64,000 nt of DNA from IMGVR_UViG_3300032562_000003:1-64000; one strand, 5' to 3'; shown: positions 400-59,817, counted from the first letter of the stretch. Numbers and translations are program-made. The notes: generated by a model not told the origin, from the letters alone.

Positions 400-504
400 A
401 TGTCGTTTATGCAAGCGTTGCGTGAAAAATTAACTGAAGTTAAGGAAGATATTATAGCAGACAAGAGCATCTCTGCTGTCTTTTCGGTTTTTAGCAGCCT
501 TTAG
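400..504 (+). pseudogene. Truncated paralogue of the small Cys-rich protein at 56609..56833
   Basis: GATAAATA late promoter at 368-375; MSFMQALREKLTEVKEDII resembles MTSFADKLKQRLTEVADQV, then runs into the antisense strand of the convergent gene before any CxxC motif. Confidence 0.55.
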
Positions 505-1290
505 GATATCAGTATATTTAAGCGTAACCGAATCGTAATGTTCTTTTAGTTTTTCGAATCCATTATATTTACGAGGTTGCGGTATAACGTCAAACCCGGC
601 CAATTGAAATAATAGACATTTATAGTGATATCCGTCTTTCTCTAATTGTTCATATTCAATTCCTTGCTGCCGACGTATAATCTCAAAAACCGGCATCAGA
701 TATTGGTCGTGCATCCAAAAATAAGGAACCATCGGTTGTTTGGAAATCTCAGAATATCTCTGCAACCCAAATTGTCCATAATTGATCGCTCCGAATTTTC
801 CGATAGATAAAACATAATTTCCGCTAGACACGACAGTACCTTCGGTAATCTTGCTTGCAATATACATGTGTGTGAGAATGTGTGGTGTGGTGCAGTTATA
901 AGTCTTAGCCCATTCTTGTAAATGATTTTCATGAAAATCAATAACATCGATGTCTAGGTAGTCGACCGAAAGCCCCTCACGTTCTGCTAATGCATTTAAC
1001 TCAACTAAATCATAATCATTCATATTGTCATTGTATCTAGCTGAAACGATTCTGAAAGGTACACCGCTGTGCTTCCAGGCTAAAATCATCGCTTGACTAT
1101 CTACACCGCCGCTGCACATCAAGGTATAAGGTGCAGGGTACTTACTAGATATACGTTCAATGGCCTCTTTAGATATTTCTAATGGTGTTTTGTCAGTAGT
1201 TGGAATAGCATTGTTGTAGTTAATATAAAACGGTAGCTTTGGGTCATGTGGTAGATAGTCTGGTCCAAACCCGTATTTTACCCAATCCAT
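430..1290 (-). CDS. PP-loop (adenine nucleotide alpha-hydrolase-like) ATPase, C-terminus probably truncated
   Basis: SGGVDS PP-loop motif; colinear similarity to 56840..57790 (YPAPY.LM.SGG.DSQ.M...W.HSGVPF; CT.PHI..HM); last ~15 aa diverge. Confidence 0.75.
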   Translation of the reverse strand: MDWVKYGFGPDYLPHDPKLPFYINYNNAIPTTDKTPLEISKEAIERISSKYPAPYTLMCSGGVDSQAMILAWKHSGVPFRIVSARYNDNMNDYDLVELNALAEREGLSVDYLDIDVIDFHENHLQEWAKTYNCTTPHILTHMYIASKITEGTVVSSGNYVLSIGKFGAINYGQFGLQRYSEISKQPMVPYFWMHDQYLMPVFEIIRRQQGIEYEQLEKDGYHYKCLLFQLAGFDVIPQPRKYNGFEKLKEHYDSVTLKYTDILKAAKNRKDSRDALVCYNIFLNFS

Positions 1291-5999: not shown

Positions 6000-6000
6000 C

Positions 6001-7016: not shown

Positions 7017-7023
7017 TTAATGT

Positions 7024-7295: not shown

Positions 7296-7299
7296 ATAT

Positions 7300-7391: not shown

Positions 7392-7880
7392 ATGTTATTA
7401 ATCGCTTATCAGGGAATCTTTAACGGTCAAAATTATGATCAAGCCAACACACCAAACCAAATCGGTTTGGCGTTTAACCATGGATATTCGGTATCAGTGG
7501 ATGTTTGGAGAGTTAACGGTATTTTGTATTTAGGTACGGACCAACCGCTCACAGAAGTTACACCTGATTATCTGAAGGGTAATCGTTTTTGGATCAATGC
7601 TAGAAACGTCGAAATGCAAGAATGGATTTCTACACAGCCGATCAAATCATATCCTAATTATTTTTGGTATGACATAACCCATCCTCCACCGTACGTTACC
7701 ACTAGCGGCGGTCAACTGTGGACCTTCGGAACAGTACCCGTAAATAACTCTAGTATCGTCGTTCTTCCTGAAATAAATGACAGAGGGCTGTTGAGTACAG
7801 TCAAGCTAAATTGCTATGGAATCTGTAGCACATATCCTACGTTTATTAGACGTATGCGCACTGAAGGTAATTGGTACTAA
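7392..7880 (+). CDS. Degenerate glycerophosphodiester phosphodiesterase-like protein
   Basis: MLLIAYQG (usually HRG)...GYSVSVDVW...LYLG.D...GICS; catalytic His residues appear substituted. Confidence 0.5.
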   Translation: MLLIAYQGIFNGQNYDQANTPNQIGLAFNHGYSVSVDVWRVNGILYLGTDQPLTEVTPDYLKGNRFWINARNVEMQEWISTQPIKSYPNYFWYDITHPPPYVTTSGGQLWTFGTVPVNNSSIVVLPEINDRGLLSTVKLNCYGICSTYPTFIRRMRTEGNWY

Positions 7881-8326
7881 TAATAGTACACGCAATATGC
7901 GTTGTTACCAGTCTCGCTTGGGTTAAAATCGCTGGTTAACTTAAACCCAGACTTAGCATAGGTCTTCCAACTAACATCTCTGGGATAACTCCAACATAGT
8001 ACTGCCTTTTCTGATCTACCCTGTGCAATCGTAGCATTCAGCAGTACAACACCTATTCCCTTTCCCCGAAACTTTTCAAATACATATAATCCTCTAGAAC
8101 GATATTCTTTGTCATTGCACATGTGACCGCTGTTGACTCCTGCAATTTCTCCGTCTATCATGTAAGCGAAGAATGTTGCAGGTGTTTCCATATTTGAACC
8201 TAAATATCCGCCGGTTCTGCACATTGCACTGTTAGTTTCGATTGTCGAAATCCTATCGGGCCACAGATAGTTTCGCCAGATTGGTAAAATTTCATCGAAC
8301 GATATGGTTATAAGTTTGTCAGTCAT
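7877..8326 (-). CDS. GNAT acetyltransferase, paralogue of 57800
   Basis: RSRGLYV...FRGKGIG motif A; ILPIW...LWPDR, VNSGH shared with 57800; TATAAATA upstream. Confidence 0.8.
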   Translation of the reverse strand: MTDKLITISFDEILPIWRNYLWPDRISTIETNSAMCRTGGYLGSNMETPATFFAYMIDGEIAGVNSGHMCNDKEYRSRGLYVFEKFRGKGIGVVLLNATIAQGRSEKAVLCWSYPRDVSWKTYAKSGFKLTSDFNPSETGNNAYCVYYY

Positions 8327-8386
8327 TCTAATATTTATAGAACCAAACTGCTTGAATATTAATTTCAATTGTCATATAATTGCAAT

Positions 8387-14163: not shown

Positions 14164-14172
14164 GGTTTAGTT

Positions 14173-14406: not shown

Positions 14407-14468
14407 CTTCGGGTATGTGTTTTGTTACTATGAATCATAGAGATTGACTCAACAAACGGAGACGTGAA

Positions 14469-17340: not shown

Positions 17341-18081
17341 CTAATCGGTACTGTAACAGAACTCACCAGTGGTGGAATTGTAATACACTGCTTTGAATCC
17401 TCCGCTGACTAAATTGGCTGTGCTATCACCACGCACAGGTTTCACTGTGAATGTGTTGGCTGTGGGTTGATCTAAGCTACTACCAGTGGCATTCAATATG
17501 ATTGAATTGTTGCCTTGATTGGTTGCACCAGCACTGGCACCAATGGCCACTGCAAAATTACCTTGATTACTAAAACCAGAACTTACACCAATGGCCACTG
17601 CTGAATTGCCCGCGGCACCGGCAGCCGCGCCAATTGCCACCGCGTAGACACCTTGATTGGTTGCACCAGCACCACCACCGATAGCCACTGCTTGTAACCC
17701 TTGATTAGTTTGACCAGCAAATGAACCAACCGCCACTGCGTTATTGCCTTGAGTGTCATATCCAGCCAGCGAACCAACAGCCACTGATTCAATGCCTTGG
17801 GTGTTCCCACCAGCCGAAGGACCAATAGCCACTGCTGAGTCGCCTTGCGATGTTTGGCCGGCACCTGGACCAAATGATACTGCGTTGCCCGCATTATCTT
17901 TTAATACAGCACCGTTTACAAGTGTGACAGTTCCAGTGCTGACATTATTAGCACCAGCGATGTTACCACCAGTTAAAGTGATATCTCCACCTGTGCCTGA
18001 GGTAGCAATGTTGCCACCAGTAATATTGCCTGTTGTGCTAAACCCGCCGTCCGAGTTAAATGGTGTTATGTTTGCTGACAT
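17341..18081 (-). CDS. YadA-head-like repeat fibre/adhesin protein
   Basis: Repeated QG..AVAIG..AG units. Confidence 0.75.
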   Translation of the reverse strand: MSANITPFNSDGGFSTTGNITGGNIATSGTGGDITLTGGNIAGANNVSTGTVTLVNGAVLKDNAGNAVSFGPGAGQTSQGDSAVAIGPSAGGNTQGIESVAVGSLAGYDTQGNNAVAVGSFAGQTNQGLQAVAIGGGAGATNQGVYAVAIGAAAGAAGNSAVAIGVSSGFSNQGNFAVAIGASAGATNQGNNSIILNATGSSLDQPTANTFTVKPVRGDSTANLVSGGFKAVYYNSTTGEFCYSTD

Positions 18082-21000: not shown

Positions 21001-22614
21001 ATATGCAGAACCATTATCACTTATTACAAGTGTGGCGTTTTGTAATGATGCTGCTAGTTCGCTTGCACCCGATCCAATTGTAACTACATTGCCATTGAAA
21101 TCTGCATTGCCAGGCGCTGTTAAGTTGCCATCGGTGCCGAACGTCCAAAGGTTAGTGTTGATTGTAGGGAAATACGTTCCAGTAGGAGGAACACTACCTA
21201 AAGGAGGATTAGTATTCCACTGAGTTAATGGATTAGTCAATGTTCCGATGTTCACATAAAGTGCTTGACCGAATCCTGGGGTCCAAATTCCCCACTCCGT
21301 ATCAAAAAGTATATAAGGATCAGTAGCTGGATTGTAACCCGCCGGATACCAACTTGGCGTTAGCTGATTGAGGTCTCTTATGTACGTAGTGTTCACCGTT
21401 GCAAAATCAGCACCGCTGATAACTATTGTAGTTGGTGCAACCGAAACAAAATCAGTTGATTGAATACTAACTGACCCGTTTGCATTTACTGATACATTTG
21501 CGTTATTATCTCTTCCAAGAATTAGATTTTCACCGTTACCTGCAATGTGAATATCTGGACCGATAGTTAAGTATATATCCAAAAATGCACCTGCATTGTT
21601 GGGATTAGGCTGTAAATGTAAATTACCAGTGCCAATGATGTTAATATCATTGAATGTAACATTACCTGTGTTACCACCTCCACCGTATGGGACACCATTT
21701 GCATAATTGATTGCCACTTCACCATTACCTGGAAGAGTCAAGTTACCTGCATGATCAAATACCCAACCTGCAGAACCAAAGCCCATACCCAACTGTGTCG
21801 AGATAGTTACACTATTTGAACTGTCTATTAATAAAGTATTGATAAATGGCGAGGGCAATAAGTTAGCAGTATTACCTAACCAACCCAAGAAAGCTTCTCC
21901 GGAATAACCCGGCAATGATATACCACCGATGTTCGCATCATCACTCTGTGGAGCAATTAACAGACTGACATTAGGACCCTCATCACCAAATTGCCATGCT
22001 AAACCGGAATTACCGGGATCAGGATTTATTGTAATAAATCCTCTAGTACCATTGATATTAGCATCAAGGTTTAGGTTACCAGTAACAGTTGCATCAACTG
22101 TTGCTAAAGGACCATAGATAGTAGCTTGCTCGGCAGCAAAATTTACAGTGTTTAATTGTGTGTTGGGAGAATCCCAGGTCAATGACGGGCTTCCACCAAA
22201 TAGACCAGAATCATTAAACTGAATCTGAGAGTTTGCTCCGCCCGGATTGCCGTTTCCTGAACCACTTTGAGCAGTCCACGATAGATTACCATTACCATTA
22301 GTCTGTAGAACATATCCATTGTTCCCGCCCGGAATCCTAACAGTACTGACATCAACGACTGACAAGTTAGCTAGTGTACCAACACTGGTTATGTTTGGTT
22401 GCGCGGCGTTAGTTACTGATTGTGCTAAAATTGCTTGGCCTGCCGGCGGAAAATATGATCCACCAGCACCACTAAGAATTAGATTCCCCACAATTTGAAG
22501 ATTAGCATTTTTAGTAGTCGGGGTACCTGACATATCAACCACAGGGAATAGAGAGGTGTAACTGAGATTAGACCCTATGTTGTTAAGACTAGTAATTTTT
22601 ATGCTGGAAATCAT
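18091..22614 (-). CDS. Large modular tail fibre-like protein
   Basis: 1507 aa, G/N/T-rich; AAQPNITSVGTL, YVLQTNGNGNLSW, recurring F..DGNL.LPGN joints. Confidence 0.75.
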   Translation of the reverse strand: MISSIKITSLNNIGSNLSYTSLFPVVDMSGTPTTKNANLQIVGNLILSGAGGSYFPPAGQAILAQSVTNAAQPNITSVGTLANLSVVDVSTVRIPGGNNGYVLQTNGNGNLSWTAQSGSGNGNPGGANSQIQFNDSGLFGGSPSLTWDSPNTQLNTVNFAAEQATIYGPLATVDATVTGNLNLDANINGTRGFITINPDPGNSGLAWQFGDEGPNVSLLIAPQSDDANIGGISLPGYSGEAFLGWLGNTANLLPSPFINTLLIDSSNSVTISTQLGMGFGSAGWVFDHAGNLTLPGNGEVAINYANGVPYGGGGNTGNVTFNDINIIGTGNLHLQPNPNNAGAFLDIYLTIGPDIHIAGNGENLILGRDNNANVSVNANGSVSIQSTDFVSVAPTTIVISGADFATVNTTYIRDLNQLTPSWYPAGYNPATDPYILFDTEWGIWTPGFGQALYVNIGTLTNPLTQWNTNPPLGSVPPTGTYFPTINTNLWTFGTDGNLTAPGNADFNGNVVTIGSGASELAASLQNATLVISDNGSAYVQAAITNVADIGSADWVAYGHHGNDAGGWVDVGFTSSFFSDANYTITGSGDGYLFAEAYLPDQAPAIGGGNLVLATGSQGTTKDIIFGTGGFLTENIFGRISDSNNELELSRTGSSLNFVGGGNIIGANNIQAGNLTVNNINLSGHIFGTSNPSLEGSATGQMSSGNLTTVSYTAGAQSVIVVASACETGNSGGNAVASITGITGLGLTWIQRSSYVDPTTLCGQKSEIWYAINNSATPVSGVITISFDINVDDQSTIVSSYQNVNLNNPWTSSGPQYSNQVNPTSNVATITANIAEHNTTGVVFMSTPNFGNSENGAGYADGWNTVNQVLNSGADLWEYSYFSCLPFLNPQSDLVVNSTNAVLPNDADGNATGLTIIFDALLGGTGLSVDRLSNGAYSAILTSSGNLNLPGNLAVSGGVITGGIPTQIDINDSITGISIGPNCNVTLSGNTFNYAERGTVVIGNVNSTTQAIGTWYYEASWFNAFNIFTDNTYSTPVDSSTWTTFVGPTDGTATITGYSPIVPITIDAGGYQTVFGIDGNIYLPSNELGNTASISTPFNANLSFKVGGTNTYTLGYDGNLTLPGNTFAVNYANGTQVNIGGGGGATNLIANGNSYANIATADGNLVVNVGTDGYGTWIFETGTGNLIGPGNVSQGAGIVFSAEQSVYIREDMGQLNIDAFGTVITSNSGNTGNTQSWNFDNDGNLTVPGNIIGNNLGNPMYITGATANTDRIAGTLVLSGGSTTNGIGGLPSAGGALVLNGGTATGCATVGGSVLINAGQGDGDWGNITLTVNSKATLFNESGQVILPAVKIGTEITYDPGNPYEGEQLGLYGTRRIISPNSGNTNQVTISTIIQSPQFGSPQVVYTAYNAKVWAFRMTMRIQHGAGTPQNMQMADIFAARNDSGDITYSITNRLKTDPTEDDVVIVPAYDPIYGTMFINATATGNGTAANGSYYFTFDVVEFNQTFD

Positions 22615-22629: not shown

Positions 22630-23697
22630 TTATCCGAATGTAACGCTATTTTGGCCAACACAGAACCATTTACTATTTACGTACTGCAGGGTACATCCTG
22701 CACCTACAGCAGCAAATGTTATGGTTCCGGATCCGCTAGCTTTCCAACCAGCAGTAGCGACTGTGATGACCATATCTCCGCCGTGTGTTACCATCATAAA
22801 TGTCTTAATCTGTCCGGCTGTTCCAGCAGCTAATGTAGCAGTGCTTCCTCCGGTCGTGCTAAAGTAACTTGCCGTGACGGCTAGATTTGCAGCAGAACCA
22901 TTAGTTAAATTCTCGCTACTGAATCCAATTGGAGACTCAACGTTAATCGTACCGGCTGATACTATTGGACTACTAGTTACATTCAAGCTGTTGCTAGATA
23001 GTCCAACTGAAGTAACGGTTCCACCTGATGCAGTAGCAGAAATAGTGATATTTCCATTACTACCAGATGCAGTAATTCCGGATCCTGCTGTGATTCTAGT
23101 TACGCCGATGTTAGTAACTGTGATACTACCGTTAGTAGTAATTGGTCCACCGTTAATCTGAATGCCCGCGCCGGGTGTTAGCCCTACGCTAGTTACAGTT
23201 CCAGCTGATGCCCCGTTAGATGCAGATGTTACTCTACCGTAGGCATCAATAGTTAGTATTGGATTAGAGTATGTTCCTGCATTCGCGCCGGTCGTTGCTA
23301 AATCTATAGTGATATTCCCACTAGATACTATAGGAGTATTGGTAACTACTAATCTAGAAGTAGAAATAGGTGTTATACCTATTGAGGTTACAGTACCTAT
23401 TCCGCCTCCTCCGCCAACGAGCGAGATAGTAATATCACCGGTCGTTCCAGTTAACTGAACGCCAGAACCCGCAGAAAGAGAAGTAACACCAGTGTTTGTA
23501 AAAGTGACGATACCATTAGAAGAATCAGTAGTTATGTTTATAGCACCACCGGACGTAAATGTATTATACGGGCTCGCACAAGCAAAAAGTGTGGTGAAGT
23601 TGTTGCTAGCTTTAGTAAAAGCTGTATATAGTGAATCGCTACCTACCGACTCGTTAGGTAGACCAATATTTATTGATTCTTTTCCAGATATACTCAT
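22630..23697 (-). CDS. Virion structural protein with T4 gp9/gp10-like N-terminus and GTVTSV repeats
   Basis: INIG.PN...SDSL..AF.K..NNF..L; repeated GTVTSVG; late promoter. Confidence 0.65.
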   Translation of the reverse strand: MSISGKESINIGLPNESVGSDSLYTAFTKASNNFTTLFACASPYNTFTSGGAINITTDSSNGIVTFTNTGVTSLSAGSGVQLTGTTGDITISLVGGGGGIGTVTSIGITPISTSRLVVTNTPIVSSGNITIDLATTGANAGTYSNPILTIDAYGRVTSASNGASAGTVTSVGLTPGAGIQINGGPITTNGSITVTNIGVTRITAGSGITASGSNGNITISATASGGTVTSVGLSSNSLNVTSSPIVSAGTINVESPIGFSSENLTNGSAANLAVTASYFSTTGGSTATLAAGTAGQIKTFMMVTHGGDMVITVATAGWKASGSGTITFAAVGAGCTLQYVNSKWFCVGQNSVTFG

Positions 23698-23750
23698 TTT
23701 CAATCCTTATGATGTATTTATCAATAAGGATCGAAAGAATTGTCCGTATC

Positions 23751-35654: not shown

Positions 35655-35730
35655 TGCAAGTTCCTCGTGTTTGTGTGCGAGAGCACCGTTGCTCTCTATG
35701 TTCTGAATATACAGATATGGATATCCGAAG

Positions 35731-36309
35731 TCAACCGATATTAGCCATTTTCTTTTGAGTGAGTTTTCGGTGTTCTTGTTCGGTCATGTTTTGGTCGTTT
35801 AGATACCAAGCCCGATTGCCGTTCTCCCATTCAACCGCCGGGCCGTCTTCTCGGTGACGTTGCCCGTTAAGATACCAATGCCGATCGCCGTTCGCATATT
35901 CAATAGCAGGGCCGCCTTCTCGGTGACGTTGCCCGTTAAGATACCAATGCCGATCGCCGTTCGCATATTCAATAGCAGGGCCGCCTTCTCGGTGACGTTG
36001 CCCGTTAAGATACCAATGCCGACCGAAGTTCGCATCTTCAACCGCCGGGCCGCCTTCTCGGTGGTATTCTCCGTAGCGATACCAATACCGAGTTCCATCC
36101 GCATATTCAACCGCCGGGCCGTCTTCTCGGTGACGTTGCCCGTTAAGATACCAATCCCGAATGCCGTTCGCATATTCACACGCCGGGCCGTCTTCTCGGT
36201 GAAGTTGTCCGTTTAGACACCACTCCCGATTTCCGAATACGTCCACGTTAATAGTATACCCCTTAAGGATATACCACATCTTTTGTTCGCCAGATAGCGG
36301 CGGTAGCAT
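35731..36309 (-). CDS. 22-aa repeat protein, paralogue 3 (6 units)
   Basis: Six 66-bp repeats; shared termini. Confidence 0.9.
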   Translation of the reverse strand: MLPPLSGEQKMWYILKGYTINVDVFGNREWCLNGQLHREDGPACEYANGIRDWYLNGQRHREDGPAVEYADGTRYWYRYGEYHREGGPAVEDANFGRHWYLNGQRHREGGPAIEYANGDRHWYLNGQRHREGGPAIEYANGDRHWYLNGQRHREDGPAVEWENGNRAWYLNDQNMTEQEHRKLTQKKMANIG

Positions 36310-51732: not shown

Positions 51733-53613
51733 TTATTTGGGTAATCGAATAGATTCCAAATAACTATTAGTATCACCGTACAGCGTCATCATCACTGCAA
51801 TGCGATGATCGTATATTCTAATAAAAGGTTTTCTTTTTTTATCTACTATTTCTGTACCTAAATAGTACGGACATTTAATTTTCTTATCTAGCTCTAATGA
51901 ATACATCGACCATCCGCCGGTCGATGGAGCCCCTGACAGGTCTTTGGGCCCATCAAATGGAAGATCATAATGCGCTATTTTGGCATACTCAAACGCATTG
52001 CGACCAGGATCAGTCAATCGTAGTCCACTACCAGATCGCCCTGTTGTCCACCAGGCAAACATCAACTTATCTACAGGGATATCCTTCCATGGACTATCAG
52101 GATCATCTCCTATCTCTGCAAGAATCTTTCTTGTGATTTCTTCTTTAGAATTAGGATAGGTCATCGGGATATACGGTTCTTCCGGAATTTAGAAAAACAA
52201 CCGTAAATTTGTCGGTCCTGAACTGTGAGTTTAACTTTCGACATAGATTTCTAGCGTGTCCTGGATTAGAGAAACTAGTTTTCTTGTACTTAGGGGCAGC
52301 ATCATCCTTGAGATAATGTGAGGATTTAAGATTGATAGGTTGATCATCATAGAATACTGCCCAAATACCTGAGGCTTCTACAATTTGATCGCACTTGTAT
52401 GTTTTTTTATCTACATGTTCTAACAGAACATTAGGTTGCGTCCTGCTCATTTAAAGGTGCCTCCTTTTATCTCAATCTGCATAACCTCATTATCAATAGG
52501 ACGCGCAACATTCAATTCATGTAGGTCAGCTAATAATTTAGCTACGTCATCACGCAATCCACGGGCTTCTGCGATAGGAAGAACCAAATCCTTATTAAGT
52601 TTGGCCTCAACCACTGCCATCTTGTCCAAAAATCGCTTGATGTGTATCATAACTAAGTATTTAGTGCCGCTTTAGCATCTTCCTCAGATTTGAACGGGCC
52701 CTTATAATTGTAGCGCTGAATGAAGATATACTTCGGACAAAACGATATAGTTTGAGTTCCATTTTGATCCATAACAAACCATCCGGCAGCATATTGGCAC
52801 TTGCTCTTGTTAGTCTTAGTAAACAGATGTAATCCGCGTTTGATATCAAACACAGAGTTATATGTGCGAGCGGTTGTTGGATATTGCGGATACGGCAAAG
52901 CCGCCTTCGTCTTGTTAGACTTGAGCGGTTCAAACTTTATTTGTGTCTTTTTCTTTAATTCAGTAGCATTGTTAAACTGTAAAAAGTGACCATTGATCTG
53001 AACGCCGTACCCTGCGTTGTTTGCCTCAATGTTTCCTACTTTCTTTTCACCGTCTGTTACAATCCAGAATTGATTCTTAACGATTGGCTTAGCAATTAGC
53101 TCTGTCATTTTGTTAGTACGCTCCATATATATTCCTTTTCACTGAGACATATTTCCCTGTCAGGTATGTAGTCTATGAACTCAACTCCGTAGTAGGCCTT
53201 TTGCAAAAATAGAAACTTACCTGATTTTTCACATTTACGGAATGGGTTGTAGACTCTCCTTTGGTCCCAACGCCATTCAGACTCGCCGGTCATCCAGTCT
53301 TCATACATCATTCTGAATGGTCCTTTGTAATCAATTTAAATAGGTCTTTCTTGTGTTTAGGAGACCACAACTTAGCGTTCGGACCGCACACACTAGTAGC
53401 TCTGGTCATTCGACAGGATTCATATTCAGCCTTACTTTTTTGGGGGCCAGTCACTACATCCTCTTTCTCAACCGATTCCTTATAATTTTTGAGGCACTTG
53501 TAATCATATGATGGAGGATTTCCGAAATAAAAAACCATGTCTGCAAATGACACAGAACTATGCTTACAGTCCTTGCAGAGATATTCAGTGTGCTTGGTTT
53601 GGTTGTCACTCAT
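51733..53613 (-). CDS. Run of hypothetical genes (51733, 52151, 52447, 52653, 53105, 53308)
   Basis: Overlapping/coupled ORFs downstream of the RNase H gene. Confidence 0.7.
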
Positions 53614-54604
53614 GTAATGCTCCAGAATAAGGCTTGTTCAGCCATTTAGAGAAAGTTTCGGCTTGTTCAGAAATCTTATTAAGTTCGTACTTACCACAGA
53701 ACTTCATCAGATGAACGCCGACCTGAGGAGTAATGTTAGTACGAACATCTCCGCGAATAACAGCATCGACCGCCTCTTTAATTTCTTGCGGTTGAGCAGT
53801 TAGATCGATGAGAGTACGATTACGCTCATAATCATCCTTAACACGGTGTTCGACACCGTTATGGTCAGTCCACCGTTGAAGCATCAGATTATTCCACTTG
53901 AAGCCCTGCTTCGTGCGGTCGTCAAATGCTTCCTTAATGCCTACTGTATTTTTACTTCCCTTTTCTCGCACGCCAGGATAAGCACTAAACACGTTATCAG
54001 TGGCGTCACCACGAATGATCTTCTTGAACAGCAGATATTCGGGGTCTTCCAAAAGCTTTTGTGTGCCGGACTTCTTGTCCTTAACAGGACGGCCACGATC
54101 ATCATAGTAACCGTCAAGCTTGATCAGTTGACCAGCAACACCGTTGTACTGACTCACATTCTCGCTAATCAACTGCACAAAGTCAGTGTCAGACGACAGG
54201 ATGTAGTGCTGATCCTCAGGATGCAGATGAATGAAGCGAGCGATAAGGTCATCGGCTTCTGCATTCTCGCAGCGAAGGACACTAGTGTTGGTCTTTTCAC
54301 GAAGATAGTTAGTAAACGTTTCATACGTCTCCCAAAACATCTTGTTTTCTTCGACTTCGGCCTCAGTAGCATTAGTAGCTACTCGATTGGCCTTATAAGG
54401 AGCATAGAACTTCTTGCGCCAAGAACGTCCTTCAAGACAAAACACAACGTGGTCAATGTCAAACATGCGAACAGCCTGATTGACAGACGACAGCGTTAGG
54501 TGCATCGCCATCCCGATCTTTTCCCACGTGTCGCTATTGCGAGACGCGACGTGCCGAGCGCGAAAGAATGTGTTAGCAGTATCTACTAATGCATACTTTA
54601 TCAT
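53606..54604 (-). CDS. T4 RNase H-like 5'-3' exonuclease / flap endonuclease
   Basis: LVD..N, YKANR, EADD, SSD.DF.QL, GD..DN. Confidence 0.92.
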   Translation of the reverse strand: MIKYALVDTANTFFRARHVASRNSDTWEKIGMAMHLTLSSVNQAVRMFDIDHVVFCLEGRSWRKKFYAPYKANRVATNATEAEVEENKMFWETYETFTNYLREKTNTSVLRCENAEADDLIARFIHLHPEDQHYILSSDTDFVQLISENVSQYNGVAGQLIKLDGYYDDRGRPVKDKKSGTQKLLEDPEYLLFKKIIRGDATDNVFSAYPGVREKGSKNTVGIKEAFDDRTKQGFKWNNLMLQRWTDHNGVEHRVKDDYERNRTLIDLTAQPQEIKEAVDAVIRGDVRTNITPQVGVHLMKFCGKYELNKISEQAETFSKWLNKPYSGALHE

Positions 54605-54722
54605 CTATATCCTCATTATTTTCACTATAATACAATGATTATAAGATAATGTCAATGTTTAATTTGATAAGATGATCTCCGATGATAAATAAGACATATA
54701 CTCCCGATTATAGGAACCCATT

Positions 54723-56606
54723 ATGAATTATCTAATCGACTTTGCTACCACGTTATCTGATGCTGATATCAACGCATATTTAGCCGCTAATAACATGACC
54801 TCAGTAAAGGCATACACGACTTTCAAGAATGTACATCTTGTTTCCTCAGAGGTAGAACCTAAGGTCGATTCCTCAGTACTAAAAGTAAATTCTGATGATG
54901 GCAATGATATCAAACTTCTAGATTTTGATATCACAGTGACTCAACCAAAGAGCGAAGAATTAGATATACAGGTACATGACGATAAGGATTGGTGGAAGGT
55001 AGTTTCTCTTAATGACGTTGATCTTTCCAAGCCAACTTACACACAGGAACGTCGTGGTTTTGGTAGCGTCGTATATATTATGGACAGCGGAATCGAAGCT
55101 ACTCATCCTGATTTTACGAACGCTAAAGTTACTTTGTTACATAGTTTTACTACTGACTTTACTGATACAAAGGGACACGGCACTGCTTTGGCTAGTTTAG
55201 TTGCAGGTGATACTTGTGGGCTGACTAGAGCTGAAATTAAGGTAGTTAAGGTATTCGATATTAACACTGCCACTAAACAAAGTGATCTATTATCAGCACT
55301 AGATGCGATTGCAGTAGATTATAATAGCAATGGTCTTCCTCCATCAGTTCTTAACTTAAGTTGGTCTATTGCCAGAAACATATATGTAGACTCTAAAATT
55401 CAAGAGCTAATCGATTTAGGTATTTTTGTGGTAGCTGCTGCTGGTAATAGTGGAACTACAATCGGTGACGTTACCCCTGCTGCTATTCCTGATGTATTGA
55501 CTATTGGTTCATTTGGTCACTCACTAACCCCTAGTGATTTTTCTGATTACACAGGCAGCGCTATTTCGGTAACGGGTTCTACTACAAACTCTGGCGCGCT
55601 AGACGGCTGGGCACCTGGAGAGAAGATTTGGGCTGCTGGATTAAAAGGTACATATGCATTTATTGCAGGTACTTCAGCTTCTTCTGCAATTGCTTCAGGA
55701 GCTATTGCTCATAATTTAAGTGTATATGTAGATAGTAACGGAAATACACCTAGTGTTTACACAAATCATAGTGCCAGAAAAGATTACTTTGCAGGGGTAT
55801 TGTCAACTTCAAATATTACTATGGACGATAATACGATGTACAGAATGATGTGTTTAGGTAAGAAAGATGTGCTGAATCTTTCTGACCCTAAATATGCTCT
55901 TTCTGAGAATTTAATCGCATCATACCTACAATCAGTTGCTATAGTGTCTCCTACAATCAGAATAATTTCAGAATCAGGTAAGCCGTACTATTCAGATGTA
56001 CTAGTCAATGCACCTATCACTAGAATCACTGGACCAGATTTACCTAGTTACGTCACAATCGATGAAACCGGACTAATGACTATTACCTCTCCGACAATAA
56101 CCGATCCATATGAACAACTTCCTTCTTTGAGCTTAACAACGTACTCAGCCTCTGGTGCAACTCAAAATATTAGTGTTATGTTGTTTGTATTCAGAGATGG
56201 GGTAACGTTAGGCAATATCTCTACACTAGTTCCTACGACAGATCCTGTAGTAAATGCAGTATTACTAGCCAATACCTGTTTGACTAACGGATATTGCGGC
56301 GTTGACGACTGTTATCTTGAAGGACCTTTTGCGTGTCTGGGCAGCGGGAAATTTGGTTGCTATTGTCAATATGGTAGTGACGAGAGAGTTAAGGACAATA
56401 TCCTCTTAGAGGACACTATAGATGGACTGAATATCTATTCATACAACTATATTTGGGATAAGCATCGTAGGCTTTCTGGTGTAATGGCACAAGAGCTGAT
56501 CGGTACAGTTCACGAAAAGGCTGTGGTCAATACAGAATCCGGTTACTTCAAGGTCGATTATAATCGGTTACCTTCTAACGTAAAGTTCAGAATTTTCGGT
56601 AAGTAA
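54723..56606 (+). CDS. Subtilisin (S8) protease fused to a Cys-rich segment and a C-terminal S74 intramolecular chaperone
   Basis: MDSG, HGT, AAGN, GTS; 6-Cys segment 56277-56375; SDERVKDNI...GVMAQEL...KVDY; late promoter. Confidence 0.85.
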   Translation: MNYLIDFATTLSDADINAYLAANNMTSVKAYTTFKNVHLVSSEVEPKVDSSVLKVNSDDGNDIKLLDFDITVTQPKSEELDIQVHDDKDWWKVVSLNDVDLSKPTYTQERRGFGSVVYIMDSGIEATHPDFTNAKVTLLHSFTTDFTDTKGHGTALASLVAGDTCGLTRAEIKVVKVFDINTATKQSDLLSALDAIAVDYNSNGLPPSVLNLSWSIARNIYVDSKIQELIDLGIFVVAAAGNSGTTIGDVTPAAIPDVLTIGSFGHSLTPSDFSDYTGSAISVTGSTTNSGALDGWAPGEKIWAAGLKGTYAFIAGTSASSAIASGAIAHNLSVYVDSNGNTPSVYTNHSARKDYFAGVLSTSNITMDDNTMYRMMCLGKKDVLNLSDPKYALSENLIASYLQSVAIVSPTIRIISESGKPYYSDVLVNAPITRITGPDLPSYVTIDETGLMTITSPTITDPYEQLPSLSLTTYSASGATQNISVMLFVFRDGVTLGNISTLVPTTDPVVNAVLLANTCLTNGYCGVDDCYLEGPFACLGSGKFGCYCQYGSDERVKDNILLEDTIDGLNIYSYNYIWDKHRRLSGVMAQELIGTVHEKAVVNTESGYFKVDYNRLPSNVKFRIFGK

Positions 56607-56608
56607 CA

Positions 56609-56833
56609 ATGACTTCGTTTGCTGATAAACTTAAGCAACGATTGACTGAGGTAGCAGACCAAGTAAGTTCGGCCATCGAAGTTGTAACATCAATCGAAGC
56701 CGAGCAGCGACTAGACATATGTAAAGGGTGCCCGGAGCTTACTCATCTTACTCACCAATGTAAGTTATGCGGCTGCTTTATGTTAGCAAAAACTAAATTA
56801 AAATCAGCTTCCTGTCCGATTAATAAATGGTAG
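56609..56833 (+). CDS. Small Cys-rich metal-binding protein
   Basis: RL.ICKGC...CKLCGC...K......CP..KW. Confidence 0.8.
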   Translation: MTSFADKLKQRLTEVADQVSSAIEVVTSIEAEQRLDICKGCPELTHLTHQCKLCGCFMLAKTKLKSASCPINKW

Positions 56834-56839
56834 GATTCA

Positions 56840-57790
56840 GTGCACCAATGGACTAGGATGGGTTGGGGAAGCGAATTCTCTGATGTTTTTCATGAAGAAA
56901 AGCAGTTACACATAGACCTATCTAATCTTACCCCAACGTACAATAAAATAACTGAAATCGCTAAGAGAGTCATACGCGATATTTCTAACCAGTACCCTGC
57001 ACCATATAATCTTATGGTAAGCGGTGGTTCCGACAGTCAGACTATGCTTTGGTGTTGGATGCATTCTGGTGTTCCTTTTAATTGTATCTCTATAGAATAT
57101 GTAGACAATACTGGAAAGGTTTACAACGAACATGATCTTGAACAGTTAAAAGAATTTGCAAATAAATTCAACATACCTATAACTTACAAACAGCTTAATA
57201 TCTTTGACTTTCTAGAGAACCATCTTTACGATTATGCTGCCAAATATCGTTGCACAAGTCCTCATATATGCTCTCATATGAAAATAGCCGAAATGGTATC
57301 TGGTACAAATATATTCAGCGGAAACTTTATTCAAGAAGGATGCTATACCTATACTGTTTTGGGTCTTAAGAGATACGCTGACGTAAACACTAATGTAATT
57401 CCGTTCTTCCTTCTACACGACGCAGAGTTAGCTGCCGCTATGGCTCAGTTTATGTATGATCCTCTAGAGGACCAAACTAAAGGCTTAGAGTGGCATATAG
57501 AAATGCTTCATAAGTATAATAATAAAATATCAATACTTCATAAAGCAGGTATACCCGTTATTCCACAGAAAACCAAATTTACCGGATTTGAGTTAATCAA
57601 AGACTATTATGACGAACATAATACGTTAACACCTATAGAACGCATTCGATATGGTAATATGCCTAGTAAAAGAGCATTTGATATACTATTTCGATATAAA
57701 TTATCAGAACAAGTTAAATATAATGATATGGTAGTGTATTTGTACAAAGACGAACTCTACTCAAACCAGAAATTAACTGTAGGCACGTAG
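56840..57790 (+). CDS. PP-loop ATPase
   Basis: SGGSDS; paralogue of 430..1290. Confidence 0.8.
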   Translation: MHQWTRMGWGSEFSDVFHEEKQLHIDLSNLTPTYNKITEIAKRVIRDISNQYPAPYNLMVSGGSDSQTMLWCWMHSGVPFNCISIEYVDNTGKVYNEHDLEQLKEFANKFNIPITYKQLNIFDFLENHLYDYAAKYRCTSPHICSHMKIAEMVSGTNIFSGNFIQEGCYTYTVLGLKRYADVNTNVIPFFLLHDAELAAAMAQFMYDPLEDQTKGLEWHIEMLHKYNNKISILHKAGIPVIPQKTKFTGFELIKDYYDEHNTLTPIERIRYGNMPSKRAFDILFRYKLSEQVKYNDMVVYLYKDELYSNQKLTVGT

Positions 57791-57799
57791 GATACTCAT

Positions 57800-58369
57800 A
57801 TGCTAGATGTTCAGGTTATAACTTTCACTCAGATTCTTCCTATTTGGAAAAATGAACTATGGCCCGACAGAATGTCAGAAATTGAAACACATAGTGCTAT
57901 GACTTGGCCTAAGCCAAAAGCTGAACCATACGACATGGGTATATTCAGTAATCCAGTTTATTTTTGGGGAATTTACGATGGGGGAGATTTAATTGCCGTT
58001 AACAGCGGACATTTATCTAGTCCACTAGAGTTTAGGAGCCGCGGTCTTTGGGTTCATCCTAATTATAGAAGTTTAGGTTTATCTCAGCAGCTTTTATTAG
58101 CAGCAAAACAAACTGCGATATCTTCTACCACAGATGGTGTGATGCCAGTTTTACTCCAACTACTAAAAATTTTCAAGATATTTATCTGGATACTTAAGTG
58201 CGAGTGTAATAAAATTCTTAAGGTCAGGACTTTCTATGTTAAGAGGAAGATATTCCTTTTTTACAATATGTACAGATGGAATACCTTCAATTTTTTTGCG
58301 AAAATATTCTTCTACCACAGATGGTGTGATGCCAGTTTTACTGACACTTATATATTCTGTACGATCTAG
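57800..58369 (+). pseudogene. GNAT acetyltransferase, C-terminally truncated near 58120
   Basis: RSRGLWV.P.YRSLG; the WS.PR..Y...GF end seen in the 7877 paralogue is missing and replaced by antisense read-through. Confidence 0.65.
58121..58342 (+). repeat. 35-bp exact direct duplication (58121-58155, 58308-58342)
   Basis: TCTTCTACCACAGATGGTGTGATGCCAGTTTTACT occurs twice. Confidence 0.95.
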
Positions 58370-58594
58370 TCCATTAAATCTAGACCTATGGGGTTTTAGG
58401 TAGGTTTTCCCGTCTTCCTCTAAGGTTCTGATCTGCCCCTCAAAACCTGGCTGAGCAATAGCTAAAAAATGTATTACTGCTGTATTTCCGATTTTAGTAT
58501 ATGCATTGGTGCGACTGTATAAATCTGTTGTAATTCCAGGTTTGGTATAGGTGTCAACCCCTTTTATTTCTGCGATATACAGAACTAATGTCAT
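58163..58594 (-). CDS. GIY-YIG/T5orf172-like nuclease-fold protein
   Basis: LYIA......YTKPGIT.....R...Y; TEY. Confidence 0.5.
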   Translation of the reverse strand: MTLVLYIAEIKGVDTYTKPGITTDLYSRTNAYTKIGNTAVIHFLAIAQPGFEGQIRTLEEDGKTYLKPHRSRFNGLDRTEYISVSKTGITPSVVEEYFRKKIEGIPSVHIVKKEYLPLNIESPDLKNFITLALKYPDKYLENF

Positions 58595-59817
58595 TTTAAG
58601 ATAGCAGTCTGCTTAGCCTGCGACAAAGCATGAAACAACGTATATCCGTTGTCATCATAGTCGTCCAAAAAATTCTTAGATATGTTTTTGAAAGTTCCGC
58701 CGGCCTGATAATATATCTGCAACCATAGAGCCAATGAAGCGTCTGCTGGTGTGTTAGGTATCTTCTCCTTAGGATATTTCATACTATACCAGTGTTTGTA
58801 CGTGGCGTCTGCTAAGAGTCGAAATTCTCCGGGAGAACCTTCAAGATTGTAAATGATGTTACCTAAAGTATGTAAAAATTCTTTTATTGTTTTGTTAGAC
58901 AGTGACGTAGTACCTTTAATTTTCCTACGTAGGGTTACCATCGGTAAAACCTCAACCGAATCTACTGCTCGGTCATCCCAGTTCCATTTATGAATTTGGC
59001 ACCACCAATGCATTTCTTCTACAGTAAGATCCTTAAGCAAATCTACCCGAGTGAAGGCTCCGGGTTTATCCTTGTTTTCATCATCTCTTTCGTGAACCGG
59101 AGTGATGTCATATGATTCCATAATTTTCTGAAATGCATATGCAGTTTCATACTTGTCGAGCGTTATGGAATTCGGACTATCCTGACGTTTAGCCAATACG
59201 TAATTTTTCCATTTGTCAAAGGACGCAAGTTTCTTTTTGTCATCTCCGTTAATACCTAAAAAGTGTTCCCGTGCAAATATAAAGTTGTCAAATTCCACAA
59301 CCTGACATTCAATTTTTAGATCAAGCCACTTATCTGATGAAATGCCTTTGCTAGAATGATAGTATCCCCATTTGGCTAATATACCATGACAGATCGCGGT
59401 GTGTTGCCCGTCTGTGATGTAATAATTAAGCTTATTTCCGCGCTTGATTTTCAGCACATTGACGAACTGAGATTTTTTACTATCAAAGTTTTCTAATATC
59501 TTTTTGATATGTTTTGGGCTATACGGTCGCTGGACGGCCTGCGCACTGAGTAATTTGCGCAACGGAATCTCCTCAGGCTTTGGCTTGATGGCCAGATTCG
59601 GAGTCGATTTCTTTTCTAAAATGTCCTTCGTTTTTACACCGAGCGGACAACTAACAAAATCATTTACTAAACTTTCTACAGATACCCCAGCAACGTCTCC
59701 TGGTTTCTTGTCCAATACGTTAGTAGGTCTAGCGGCCGAATCAATCGTATCTTGACCCTTTCTATTGTTTAGAATATCAATCCGTTTGAAAACTGACGGA
59801 AACTTAGAACTTGACAT
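58591..59817 (-). CDS. ParB/Srx-like DGQH-domain protein
   Basis: VQR....H...I...F; YYITDGQHT; F..IN. Confidence 0.65.
   Translation of the reverse strand: MSSSKFPSVFKRIDILNNRKGQDTIDSAARPTNVLDKKPGDVAGVSVESLVNDFVSCPLGVKTKDILEKKSTPNLAIKPKPEEIPLRKLLSAQAVQRPYSPKHIKKILENFDSKKSQFVNVLKIKRGNKLNYYITDGQHTAICHGILAKWGYYHSSKGISSDKWLDLKIECQVVEFDNFIFAREHFLGINGDDKKKLASFDKWKNYVLAKRQDSPNSITLDKYETAYAFQKIMESYDITPVHERDDENKDKPGAFTRVDLLKDLTVEEMHWWCQIHKWNWDDRAVDSVEVLPMVTLRRKIKGTTSLSNKTIKEFLHTLGNIIYNLEGSPGEFRLLADATYKHWYSMKYPKEKIPNTPADASLALWLQIYYQAGGTFKNISKNFLDDYDDNGYTLFHALSQAKQTAILK

What the first reader, a model, noticed from the sequence alone, without database searches (positions are those of the whole stretch)
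54683..58160. Candidate new system: subtilisin-Cys-peptide-S74 fusion with dedicated PP-loop ATPase, Cys metal-binding protein and GNAT (RiPP-like or virion-protein tailoring module)
Seen: one late promoter (GATAAATA) precedes four tightly spaced genes. These are (i) an S8 protease with intact D/H/S triad and no signal peptide, ending in CLTNGYCGVDDCYLEGPFACLGSGKFGCYCQYG immediately followed by an S74 SDERVK domain, (ii) a 74-aa CxxC/CxxCGC/CP protein, (iii) an SGGxDS PP-loop ATPase and (iv) a GNAT. Known: S74 domains trimerise their passenger and autocleave near the Ser-Asp, normally on tail spikes and fibres. PP-loop enzymes adenylate substrates (asparagine synthetase/lasso cyclase, TtcA/ThiI). 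S8 proteases and GNATs are common RiPP tailoring enzymes. Inference: autocleavage would expose the 6-Cys peptide as the new C-terminus, and the in-cis protease could release it. The neighbouring enzymes could adenylate, cyclise, amidate or acylate it. That would be a self-processing modified-peptide system, or a modified trimeric virion protease. I do not know of a described phage system with this architecture.
Basis: partly seen in the sequence, partly recalled or inferred. Interest (0 to 1): 0.85.

Follow-up and report, generated by a model that had tools for sequence, protein, structure and literature searches.

The report
Phage protease with hypervariable cysteine tail
A large uncultured phage carries a tight gene cassette found only in viruses: a proteinase-K-like protease ending in a fast-evolving, cysteine-knotted tail, always next to an asparagine-synthetase-like ATP enzyme and usually a small cysteine protein, which looks like an undescribed system for tailoring a protein's C-terminal end.

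Summary
The four ORFs sit at 54723-58369: S8 protease plus S74, DUF6171, a PP-loop enzyme and a GNAT. The GNAT here is only a 5' remnant, cut at residue 107 by a rearrangement; a full copy lies at 7877-8326(-).

The cassette is not a chance neighbourhood. In 46 of 46 untruncated viral loci found with the PP-loop protein alone, an S8 gene lies on the same strand within 900 bp, in either order.

- Across 145 distinct proteins the S8 tail is hypervariable.
- It always has an even number of Cys (6, 8, 10 or 14) and at least one Lys, usually just before a terminal CxC.
- It ends 0-8 residues after the last Cys.
- Two unrelated self-cleaving domains, S74 (here) and Hint, have been fused at exactly that end in different lineages.
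- DUF6171 tracks the Cys tail. Cys-less tails come with an Asp/Asn-hydroxylase-like cupin instead.
- The PP-loop enzyme folds like the asparagine synthetase B synthetase domain.

Best reading: a virus-specific system that matures the protease's own C-terminal tail. The chemistry is inferred, not shown. No description of it was found in the literature searched. Interest is high.

The parts
54684..54691 (+). GATAAATA motif, 31 nt upstream of ORF1; a possible T4-type late promoter (unverified)
   Evidence: Sequence. The ATAAATA core occurs 31 times against 21.6 +/- 4.5 expected. Perfect TATAAATA motifs precede the paralogues at 1290 and 8326.
54723..56606 (+). ORF1, 627 aa: I9-like propeptide, proteinase-K-like S8 domain, beta-sandwich, linker, Cys-rich tail and S74 cap
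55035..55802 (+). S8 catalytic domain (residues 105-360). Triad D121, H152, S318 and oxyanion N242.
   Evidence: Pfam E 3.2e-16. Triad columns are invariant in 35 sequences. AF2 pLDDT is above 90 here. The best PDB matches are the proteinase K family, TM about 0.83 normalised by target length.
56223..56276 (+). Conserved junction (residues 501-518) with the P-x-x-D-P-hydrophobic strand motif before the first Cys. The predicted disorder starts here.
   Evidence: T501, P504, D507, P508 and L514 are invariant in A1. The motif is seen across homologues. pLDDT is below 50 from residue 507.
56277..56375 (+). Hypervariable Cys tail (residues 519-551). Cys at 519, 525, 530, 538, 546 and 548; the single Lys is K543. 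It ends QYG551.
56376..56603 (+). S74 / intramolecular-chaperone self-cleaving domain (residues 552-627). Ser552-Lys557 dyad in the sequence SDERVK.
   Evidence: Pfam 23.9 bits against 22 and PHROG 6121 at 1e-10. The S-D-x-x-x-K motif is present in all 18 S74-bearing homologues. Cleavage rule from PMC8326128.
56609..56833 (+). ORF2, 74 aa: DUF6171 small Cys protein (C38, C41, C51, C54, C56, C69; ends CPINKW)
   Evidence: Pfam 32.9 bits against 27 and PHROG 13558 at 2e-18. Alignments. The related Atlas clusters are almost all viral.
56840..57790 (+). ORF3, 316 aa: PP-loop enzyme with an asparagine-synthetase-B-type synthetase fold and no glutaminase domain. SGGSDS at residues 61-66. The GTG start is kept because W4 is nearly invariant.
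57800..58120 (+). ORF4: 5' remnant of a GNAT gene (residues 1-107 of about 152). The open frame runs on to 58369 as unrelated sequence.
58121..58155 (.). First copy of a perfect 35-nt direct repeat. It marks the breakpoint of the GNAT gene. The second copy is at 58308-58342, inside the minus-strand ORF 58163-58594.
430..1290 (-). Paralogue of the PP-loop enzyme (286 aa, 37% identical). It has no adjacent S8 gene and its C-terminal end has diverged.
   Evidence: (L025).
7877..8326 (-). Full-length GNAT paralogue (about 149 aa from the ATG at 8326). It is closer to the cassette-linked GNATs of other phages than ORF4 is.
   Evidence: tblastn 43-53% identity over the whole length. Pfam Acetyltransf_1 at 1.7e-9. 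Start codon seen.

Best explanation
ORF1-ORF3 form a virus-specific cassette that makes and matures a proteinase-K-like protease carrying a swappable, disulfide-knotted C-terminal mini-domain.

Shown:
- The protease and the AsnB-like PP-loop enzyme are an obligate gene pair.
- The tail is a hypervariable cassette with an even Cys count, an invariant Lys and a free end just after a terminal CxC.
- The kind of accessory gene follows the kind of tail.

Inferred:
1. The tail is the substrate of the neighbouring enzymes.
2. In this phage, S74 trimerises and cuts itself off between G551 and S552. This unmasks the C-terminus that most relatives have natively.
3. The PP-loop enzyme adenylates a carboxylate of the tail. 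The alpha-carboxylate of the free C-terminus is the most likely target, because it is the only carboxylate every tail has. The adenylate is then resolved to an amide: either C-terminal amidation or an isopeptide to the invariant Lys.
4. DUF6171, with its two CxxC pairs, assists folding, oxidation or presentation of the Cys-rich tail.
5. A GNAT, supplied here by the intact copy at 7877-8326, may acylate an amine such as the Lys.

It remains open whether the finished tail stays on the protease as a targeting module or is clipped off in the conserved linker.
For: Linkage:
- The PP-loop profile alone retrieved 55 viral loci. All 46 untruncated PP-loop genes have an S8 gene on the same strand within 900 bp, in both gene orders.
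- The closest S74-bearing relatives carry S8+S74, DUF6171 and the PP-loop enzyme as a three-gene island on the opposite strand to their neighbours.
- The family is essentially virus-only: one unrelated hit in 185,579 cellular species.

Tail:
- In 145 distinct tails the Cys count is 6 (91 tails), 8 (52), 10 (1) or 14 (1), and never odd.
- Every tail has a Lys, and 119 have exactly one. It lies mostly 4-8 residues before the last Cys. Arg makes up only 0.8% of tail residues.
- L021 against L022: body 95% identical with dN 0.024 and dS 0.34, while tail DNA is 45% identical.

Free end:
- S74 follows the tail in the window, in L034 and in 18 of the 120 best database homologues.
- A Hint domain starting with its catalytic Cys follows it in L027, L032 and L037.
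- These cases lie in separate clades of the S8 tree.

Accessory swap:
- DUF6171 is present in 24 of 27 Cys-tail loci and 0 of 18 Cys-less loci.
- The cupin c5 (motif HRD...H, Asp/Asn-hydroxylase-like) is present in 0 of 27 and 17 of 18 respectively.
- The tail state changes three times on the tree, and the accessory gene swaps the same way each time.

Enzyme:
- The AF2 model has pLDDT 91.5. The best PDB match is AsnB 1ct9 (E 1e-6, TM 0.50), followed by beta-lactam synthetase.
- The nearest named Atlas clusters are asparagine synthases.
- No Cys is conserved across the family, which argues against an Fe-S thiolase.
- Precedent: the AsnB-like TsrC amidates the C-terminus of thiostrepton (PMC4525488).
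Against: - No chemistry has been observed. No mass, structure or complex links the PP-loop enzyme to the tail.
- AF2 gives no confident structure for the tail (pLDDT about 34).
- The fold ranking of AsnB over TtuA, LarE, NadE and TilS covers only about two orders of magnitude in E-value.
- Three Cys-tail loci lack DUF6171. DUF6171 also pairs with QueC-like PP-loop genes in some loci, so it may be a partner of PP-loop enzymes rather than of the tail.
- Hint-bearing variants would already produce an activated thioester at the C-terminus, yet they keep the PP-loop gene.
- In Cys-less relatives the Lys is the very last residue, which fits a Lys-to-C-terminus ring poorly.
- Three independent contrasts cannot reach statistical significance.
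- Disulfides are unexpected in a reducing cytoplasm.
Confidence: 0.4

Rival explanations
1. Released RiPP. The 500-residue protease acts as a giant leader and as the protease for its own chain. After tailoring, the Cys peptide of about 33 residues is cut off in the conserved linker. It then acts as a free modified peptide, for example as a toxin, a signal or an inhibitor.
For: - The tail is a hypervariable core behind a conserved junction motif.
- The linker is predicted to be disordered and is rich in hydrophobic residues, which suits a proteinase-K-type enzyme.
- The catalytic triad is invariant.
- Tailoring-type neighbours are present: the AsnB-like enzyme, a GNAT, a hydroxylase-like cupin, and a 280-aa P-loop protein in some loci.
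- An enzyme fused to its own core peptide has a precedent in the borosins (my own knowledge).
Against: - No cleavage site has been shown.
- Keeping a full propeptide, catalytic domain and beta-sandwich in more than 400 homologues suggests the protease has a job beyond releasing one peptide.
- No recognition element or export gene was seen.
- The even Cys count points to a folded disulfide knot, which works equally well as an attached domain.
Confidence: 0.2
2. Protease with a binding module. The tail is simply a small disulfide-rich targeting or adhesion domain, comparable to the Cys-rich C-terminal domains of proprotein convertases or small carbohydrate-binding knots. It sits on a protease that is released at lysis or carried on the virion. 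The PP-loop enzyme and DUF6171 act on something else and are merely co-expressed.
For: - The even Cys count and the G/S/T/N/P-rich loops are typical of knotted binding domains.
- Replacement of the tail as a cassette resembles the exchange of receptor-binding tips.
- S74 normally caps the distal tips of trimeric fibres.
- The S8 domain is structurally similar to PCSK9 and proteinase K.
Against: - Adjacency in 46 of 46 loci, in both gene orders and down to about 25% identity, is hard to explain by co-expression alone.
- The kind of accessory gene follows the kind of tail.
- There is no N-terminal virion-anchor domain; an I9-like propeptide sits there instead.
- The cassette lies among replication and accessory genes.
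Confidence: 0.2
3. DUF6171 is the real substrate. The 74-aa Cys protein, which ends CPxxKW, is a conserved precursor of a cofactor-like peptide. The PP-loop enzyme matures it and the S8 protease trims it, as in the QhpC/QhpE or PQQ type of pathway.
For: - It is a small Cys-rich protein with a conserved C-terminal K-W. In several phages, this one included, it ends exactly there.
- The S8 gives a weak, sub-threshold match to the QhpE protease model.
Against: - DUF6171 is absent from all 18 Cys-less loci and from 3 Cys-tail loci, all of which keep the S8 and PP-loop pair.
- In other loci it pairs with QueC-like genes.
- In other viral proteins it occurs as a fused domain.
- The QhpE hit is generic S8 similarity: 35 bits against a cut-off of 165.
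Confidence: 0.07
4. Nucleic-acid modification. The PP-loop enzyme, with DUF6171 and a GNAT, modifies phage tRNA or DNA in the manner of TilS or QueC. The protease is unrelated.
For: - There are weak sequence hits to TilS, QueC and the PP-loop family.
- QueC-like genes, and in one case a FolE-like gene, lie nearby in some loci.
- The paralogues in the window flank a tRNA cluster.
Against: - All of those hits fall below their curated cut-offs.
- The fold is closest to AsnB and beta-lactam synthetase.
- This reading does not explain the obligate S8 adjacency or the co-variation between tail and accessory gene.
Confidence: 0.08

Closest known systems
Asparagine synthetase B-type amide-forming PP-loop enzymes acting on peptides (lasso cyclases; thiostrepton TsrC; beta-lactam synthetase)
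   Same: - PP-loop SGGxDS motif.
- The predicted fold is closest to the AsnB synthetase domain and to beta-lactam synthetase.
- It is genetically paired with a protease and a peptide-like substrate.
- TsrC amidates the C-terminus of a RiPP.
   Different: - There is no glutaminase domain.
- Pfam Asn_synthase is not hit, and sequence identity is about 10-14%.
- The partner protease is a subtilase, not a lasso B-type Cys protease.
- Several tails have no Asp or Glu at all, so a lasso-type ring is impossible.
- The family is restricted to viruses.
RiPP precursors fused to their own enzyme (borosins such as OphMA), and Cys-framework hypervariable peptides (prochlorosins, conotoxins)
   Same: The core is the C-terminal end of an enzyme. 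A conserved body and junction carry a hypervariable core on a fixed Cys framework.
   Different: - The fused enzyme is a protease, not the tailoring enzyme.
- No lanthionine synthetase, YcaO or radical SAM enzyme is present.
- The even Cys count suggests disulfides rather than thioethers.
- The comparison rests on recalled knowledge of those families and was not tested here.
S74 / intramolecular chaperone auto-cleavage domains of phage endosialidases, T5 L-shaped fibres and MyRF
   Same: The Pfam hit is above its cut-off. The Ser-Lys dyad with Ser+5 spacing (SDERVK) is present, and the domain is at the extreme C-terminus.
   Different: - The upstream passenger is a Cys-rich tail of about 33 residues on a globular protease, not a triple beta-helix or fibre.
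- The domain is optional within this protease family (about 15% of homologues).
- In other lineages it is replaced by a Hint domain at the same position.
Subtilases with C-terminal Cys-rich domains (proprotein convertases, PCSK9) and proteinase K
   Same: The catalytic domain superposes on proteinase K and PCSK9. It has an N-terminal inhibitor-like propeptide and a Cys-rich C-terminal appendage.
   Different: - The appendage is far smaller (23-70 residues) and hypervariable.
- It requires a free end.
- It comes with dedicated accessory genes.
- There is no signal peptide.

Membership tests
Peptidase S8 (subtilase) | Asp-His-Ser triad in that order plus the oxyanion Asn; Pfam PF00082 above its gathering score | tested here: met
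   59.9 bits against 21.8. D121, H152, S318 and N242 are invariant in 35 sequences. The fold matches proteinase K.
Peptidase S74 / ICA self-cleaving domain | Pfam PF13884 above its gathering score; catalytic Ser with Lys at +5 | tested here: met
   23.9 bits against 22. S552 and K557. S-D-x-x-x-K is present in all 18 S74-bearing homologues. Dyad rule.
Peptidase S74 / ICA self-cleaving domain | Trimerisation-dependent self-cleavage; an upstream trimeric beta-helix or fibre passenger | tested here: inconclusive
   Cleavage cannot be tested with these tools. The upstream segment is predicted to be disordered and no beta-helix is seen. The monomer model of the domain itself has low confidence.
PP-loop ATP pyrophosphatase superfamily | SGGxDS PP-loop at the start of a Rossmann-like fold | tested here: met
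   SGGSDS at residues 61-66. AF2 pLDDT 91.5, with 46 PDB matches at E <= 1e-3; all 50 matches listed are PP-loop enzymes. Pfam sequence hits are below their cut-offs (19 against 27).
Asparagine synthetase B / lasso cyclase / beta-lactam synthetase clade | Pfam Asn_synthase signature; an N-terminal (possibly degenerate) glutaminase-type domain | tested here: not met
   There is no PF00733 hit and only about 45 residues precede the PP-loop. The resemblance is in fold only (TM 0.50 to 1ct9; Atlas neighbours).
Lasso peptide system | Core with Asp or Glu at position 7-9 to close a ring on the N-terminal amine; a B-type Cys protease | tested here: not met
   The tails of L007 and L008 contain no acidic residue. 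The partner protease is a subtilase.
GNAT acetyltransferase (ORF4) | A complete GNAT fold including the C-terminal part that follows the acetyl-CoA P-loop | tested here: not met
   The Pfam hit covers profile positions 15-90 of 116 only. Homology ends at residue 107 of about 152, at the 35-nt repeat. The paralogue at 7877-8326 is complete.
DUF6171 | Pfam PF19668 above its gathering score | tested here: met
   32.9 bits against 27. The Cys pattern is conserved in 26 homologues.
RiPP biosynthetic cluster (generic) | A ribosomal precursor with a variable core next to tailoring enzymes | tested here: met
   Hypervariable tail. Obligate AsnB-like neighbour. The kind of accessory gene follows the kind of tail.
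RiPP biosynthetic cluster (generic) | The core is actually modified and released from its leader | not testable with these tools
   This needs mass spectrometry of the expressed product.
Known anti-phage defence systems (PADLOC) | A match of the cassette proteins to a defined system | tested here: not met
   Only a generic subtilase hit was found. There was nothing for ORF2, ORF3 or the GNAT.

The most novel reading that the evidence does not exclude
Phages encode a previously unrecognised class of ribosomal, post-translationally finished mini-proteins. Each is a swappable cystine knot of 23-70 residues displayed on, or released from, a subtilase. Its free C-terminus is activated by a virus-specific AsnB-like ligase and joined to the single invariant Lys, or amidated. 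Self-cleaving S74 or Hint caps serve as timers. Because the knot is replaced as a cassette between near-identical phages, it would be a host- or competitor-targeting determinant in an arms race.
Probability: 0.2. Interest if true: 0.9.

Novelty: new variant of a known kind. Interest (0 to 1): 0.78.

Why it matters
The cassette is abundant. There are at least 416 protease clusters at 90% identity with E <= 1e-30, and 288 PP-loop clusters at 50% identity with E <= 1e-30. It is confined to viruses and carries no functional annotation: sources call the protease only a generic subtilisin-family protease and the other genes hypothetical. No paper in the searched library mentions DUF6171.

If the tail really is enzymatically finished, this would be a new route to modified Cys-knot peptides or proteins. 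It would also be a rare case of peptide-tailoring chemistry carried by lytic phages.

Two further points stand on their own. Two unrelated self-cleaving domains have been recruited independently to the same junction. The accessory enzyme changes together with the tail type. Together they give clear, cheap experimental handles: mass shifts of a single C-terminal peptide. The system could also supply a natural scaffold for displaying variable knotted peptides.

Tried and rejected
- Megablast of the region against GenBank phages gave no match.
- tblastn of the PP-loop proteins of both subgroups against GenBank phages gave no match. The S8 hits only generic Bacillus-phage subtilases at about 27% identity.
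- The PDB sequence search with the PP-loop profile found nothing meaningful. Only fold search worked.
- The scan of cellular genomes gave one hit, a different PP-loop gene in a spirochaete MAG beside radical-SAM and restriction-type genes. I rejected it as unrelated.
- Pfam and NCBIfam found nothing for three families: the cupin c5, the 280-aa protein with a PRSGS motif (which I suspected to be a sulfotransferase, unconfirmed), and the conserved neighbours c6-c9.
- PADLOC gave only a generic subtilase hit.
- Literature searches for DUF6171, for S74 with subtilisin, and for viral Cys-rich subtilases found no description.
- The independent-contrast test of tail against accessory gene has only 2-3 contrasts and cannot reach significance.
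- The promoter question is unresolved.
- AF2 did not fold the tail or the S74 monomer.
- An attempt to identify the host or habitat from NCBI-held homologues gave only an anonymous contig in a very fragmented assembly.
- A lanthipeptide-like or metal-cluster reading of the Cys was considered. I set it aside because the Cys count is even in 145 of 145 tails and no matching synthetase is present.
- A DGR-type mutagenesis origin of the variability was considered. I set it aside because tail DNA is about 45% identical, that is, replaced rather than point-mutated.

Full report
**Where the window comes from.** The window is the first 64 kb of a 258,859-bp uncultured viral contig, IMGVR_UViG_3300032562_000003. 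Window and contig coordinates coincide. It carries five tRNA genes. Replication genes surround the finding: a flap endonuclease at 53606-54604(-), an ATP-dependent DNA ligase, an AAA ATPase, and a ParB-like protein at 58591-59817(-). No GenBank phage is close at the DNA level.

**The observation.** Four plus-strand ORFs follow each other with gaps of 2, 6 and 9 nt.
- ORF1 (54723-56606, 627 aa) is a subtilase. Pfam S8 scores 3.2e-16. D121, H152, S318 and N242 are invariant in 35 homologues.
- The AF2 model of ORF1 has mean pLDDT 78.7. It shows an N-terminal beta-alpha-beta propeptide-like unit and a catalytic domain at residues 105-360, which superposes on proteinase K and PCSK9. A beta-sandwich follows at residues 411-490. 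From residue 507 onward confidence is very low.
- That low-confidence stretch holds the Cys-rich tail at residues 519-551, with six Cys and one Lys (K543). An S74 domain follows. Its Ser552-Lys557 pair matches the catalytic dyad of endosialidase and MyRF.
- Those domains cut N-terminal to the Ser, so the mature end would be G551.
- ORF2 (74 aa) is a DUF6171 protein.
- ORF3 (316 aa) has the SGGSDS motif. Its Pfam PP-loop hits are below their cut-offs, but its AF2 model (pLDDT 91.5) matches PP-loop enzymes. The synthetase domain of asparagine synthetase B comes first (E 1e-6, TM 0.50), then beta-lactam synthetase, then TtuA, LarE and NAD synthetase. The language-model atlas also places it next to asparagine synthase clusters.
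- ORF4 starts as a GNAT. It loses all homology at residue 107 of about 152, exactly where a perfect 35-nt direct repeat begins (58121-58155 and 58308-58342). It is a gene remnant.
- An intact GNAT of the same family lies at 7877-8326(-), and a second PP-loop paralogue at 430-1290(-).
- The GATAAATA motif exists at 54684-54691. Its promoter role is untested.

**Is the neighbourhood meaningful?** I searched viral contigs with a profile of the PP-loop protein only and obtained 55 loci. HMMs of the four families were then run on all ORFs of these loci.
- After removing duplicates, all 46 PP-loop genes that are not cut by a contig end have an S8 gene on the same strand within 900 bp. Either gene can come first, and pairwise identities go down to about 25%.
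- DUF6171 and GNAT genes recur in the same loci.
- The closest S74-bearing relatives show S8+S74, DUF6171 and the PP-loop enzyme as a three-gene island among oppositely oriented genes, with no GNAT.
- A scan of one genome from each of 185,579 bacterial and archaeal species found only one unrelated PP-loop gene. The family is therefore effectively restricted to viruses.
- It is large. There are 416 protease clusters at E <= 1e-30 and 288 PP-loop representatives at E <= 1e-30.

**The tail.** I pooled 145 distinct proteins.
- The segment after a conserved P-x-x-D-P-hydrophobic junction is 23-70 residues long, with a median of 32. It is rich in Gly, Ser, Thr, Asn and Pro.
- The Cys count is 6 (91 tails), 8 (52), 10 (1) or 14 (1). 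It is never odd.
- Every tail has a Lys, and 119 have exactly one. It usually sits in the loop before a terminal CxC, 4-8 residues before the last Cys. Arg and His are nearly absent.
- Between phages whose protease bodies are 95% identical (dN 0.024, dS 0.34), only 6 of 29 non-Cys tail positions match, and tail DNA is 45% identical. The tail is exchanged as a cassette.
- An always-even Cys count on a hypervariable background is the signature of paired Cys, most simply three or four disulfides. It argues against thioether or metal-cluster readings.

**The free end.**
- About 85% of homologues stop 0-8 residues after the last Cys.
- In the window, in L034 and in 18 of the 120 best database hits, an S74 domain starts 1-3 residues after the CxC. 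All of them have S-D-x-x-x-K.
- In L027, L032 and L037 a Hint domain begins with its catalytic Cys at the same place.
- On a tree of the protease bodies these variants lie in separate clades. The window's sister, L013, has no cap.
- Two unrelated self-removing domains recruited repeatedly to one junction argue that the end of the tail must become free.

**Accessory genes follow the tail type.**
- A second group of cassettes, plus L019 and L033 inside the first group, has no Cys tail. In most of them a conserved tail ends in an invariant C-terminal Lys.
- DUF6171 occurs in 24 of 27 Cys-tail loci and in none of 18 Cys-less loci.
- A 210-aa cupin with an HRD...H motif occurs in 17 of 18 Cys-less loci and in no Cys-tail locus.
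- The cupin resembles Asp/Asn beta-hydroxylases, but only weakly: PDB E 0.05, and atlas score 0.97 to viral clusters carrying PF05118.
- On the tree the tail state changes three times and the accessory gene swaps with it each time. One case is L019, sister to L009 with 99% SH-aLRT support. Three contrasts cannot be statistically significant.
- Some loci add a QueC-like second PP-loop gene, often just after a second DUF6171, or a 280-aa P-loop-like protein.

**Mechanism.**
- The data show an obligate protease and AsnB-like pair, a swappable knotted tail with a required free end and a required Lys, and accessory genes that match the tail.
- I infer that the tail is the substrate.
- The only carboxylate shared by all tails is the C-terminal one. 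The L007 and L008 tails have no Asp or Glu at all. AsnB-type enzymes adenylate carboxylates and form amides. I therefore propose activation of the C-terminal carboxylate, giving either an amide or an isopeptide to the invariant Lys. The thiostrepton enzyme TsrC is a precedent for amidation.
- DUF6171 would help fold, oxidise or present the Cys tail. A GNAT could acylate the Lys.
- S74 here would act as a self-removing cap that works only after trimerisation.
- None of these chemical steps is demonstrated.

**Points against.**
- Hint variants keep the PP-loop gene even though they would already yield an activated thioester.
- DUF6171 also pairs with QueC-like genes.
- The C-terminal Lys of Cys-less tails fits a ring model poorly.
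- Disulfides are unexpected in the cytoplasm.

**Comparison with known systems.**
- It works most like a RiPP or protein-tailoring cluster in which the substrate is fused to an enzyme.
- It is not a lasso system: the tails lack an acidic ring residue and the partner protease is of a different kind.
- It does not pass sequence criteria for the asparagine synthase family: there is no glutaminase domain and no PF00733 hit.
- It is not a known defence system.
- The S74 domain passes its sequence tests but has an atypical passenger.
- Literature searches found no description of the cassette, and no paper mentions DUF6171.

**Verdict.**
The comparative predictions hold; the chemistry is open.
- It is best filed as a new, virus-specific variant of peptide or protein C-terminal tailoring systems.
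- Interest is 0.78.

Noticed in passing
window 430-1290(-) and 7877-8326(-): Second copies of the PP-loop enzyme (286 aa, with a diverged C-terminal end) and of the GNAT (intact) lie 50 kb from the cassette. They flank a tRNA cluster at 4238-7374 (Lys-CTT, two Met-CAT, Gly-TCC, Gly-GCC). No S8 or DUF6171 gene is beside them.
   Followed up: partly
window 58121-58155 and 58308-58342; ORF 58163-58594(-): A perfect 35-nt direct repeat marks where the GNAT gene breaks. The second copy lies inside a 143-aa minus-strand ORF with no family match. This suggests that a gene was inserted, with a duplication, and destroyed the GNAT 3' end.
   Followed up: partly
window 2723-2786, 3041-3104, 3268-3331: There are three copies of a 64-nt element: TTGACT, a 17-nt spacer, TATATT, a strong ribosome-binding site and ATG, each in front of a small ORF. 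They look like repeated early promoters.
   Followed up: no
window 1311-1317(-), 8332-8339(-), 54684-54691(+): A perfect TATAAATA lies 20 nt upstream of the PP-loop paralogue's ATG, and another lies 5 nt upstream of the true ATG of the intact GNAT. The S8 operon has GATAAATA. The 13-mer ATGATAAATAAGA occurs identically at 366-378 and 54682-54694. This may indicate shared late-type regulation.
   Followed up: partly
window 35722-36273 and 17510-17839: A 69-nt unit is repeated tandemly about eight times across 35722-36273 (six overlapping 207-nt copies at 69-nt spacing), inside ORF 35731-36309(-). A 48-nt repeat occurs six times inside ORF 17341-18081(-). Both encode repetitive proteins of unknown role.
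   Followed up: no
window 3598-3940 and 14172-14445: A segment of about 340 nt is duplicated at 84-89% identity. The copy at 3584-3901 encodes a protein with MORN-like repeats (YANGxRHWYLNGQRHREDGPA).
   Followed up: no
window 18091-22614(-): A 1507-aa ORF has no PHROG match. Its neighbours at 22630-23703(-) and 1330-2721(+) also have none.
   Followed up: no
L016 5402-10595: One phage carries two tandem PP-loop and S8 pairs with different 8-Cys tails and a single DUF6171 between them.
   Followed up: no
L008 11469-12343; L024 4068-4930; L009 10520-12730: In L008 and L024 a second DUF6171 gene is followed directly by a QueC-like PP-loop gene of about 205 aa. L009 has the QueC-like gene, without a second DUF6171, and a GTP cyclohydrolase I-like gene nearby. 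This may be 7-deazaguanine chemistry, or DUF6171 may be a general partner of PP-loop enzymes.
   Followed up: partly
L039-L059 (Cys-less cassettes): In this subgroup a conserved minus-strand gene of about 265 aa sits between the PP-loop and S8 genes. A conserved gene of about 260 aa follows S8. Neither has a family match.
   Followed up: no
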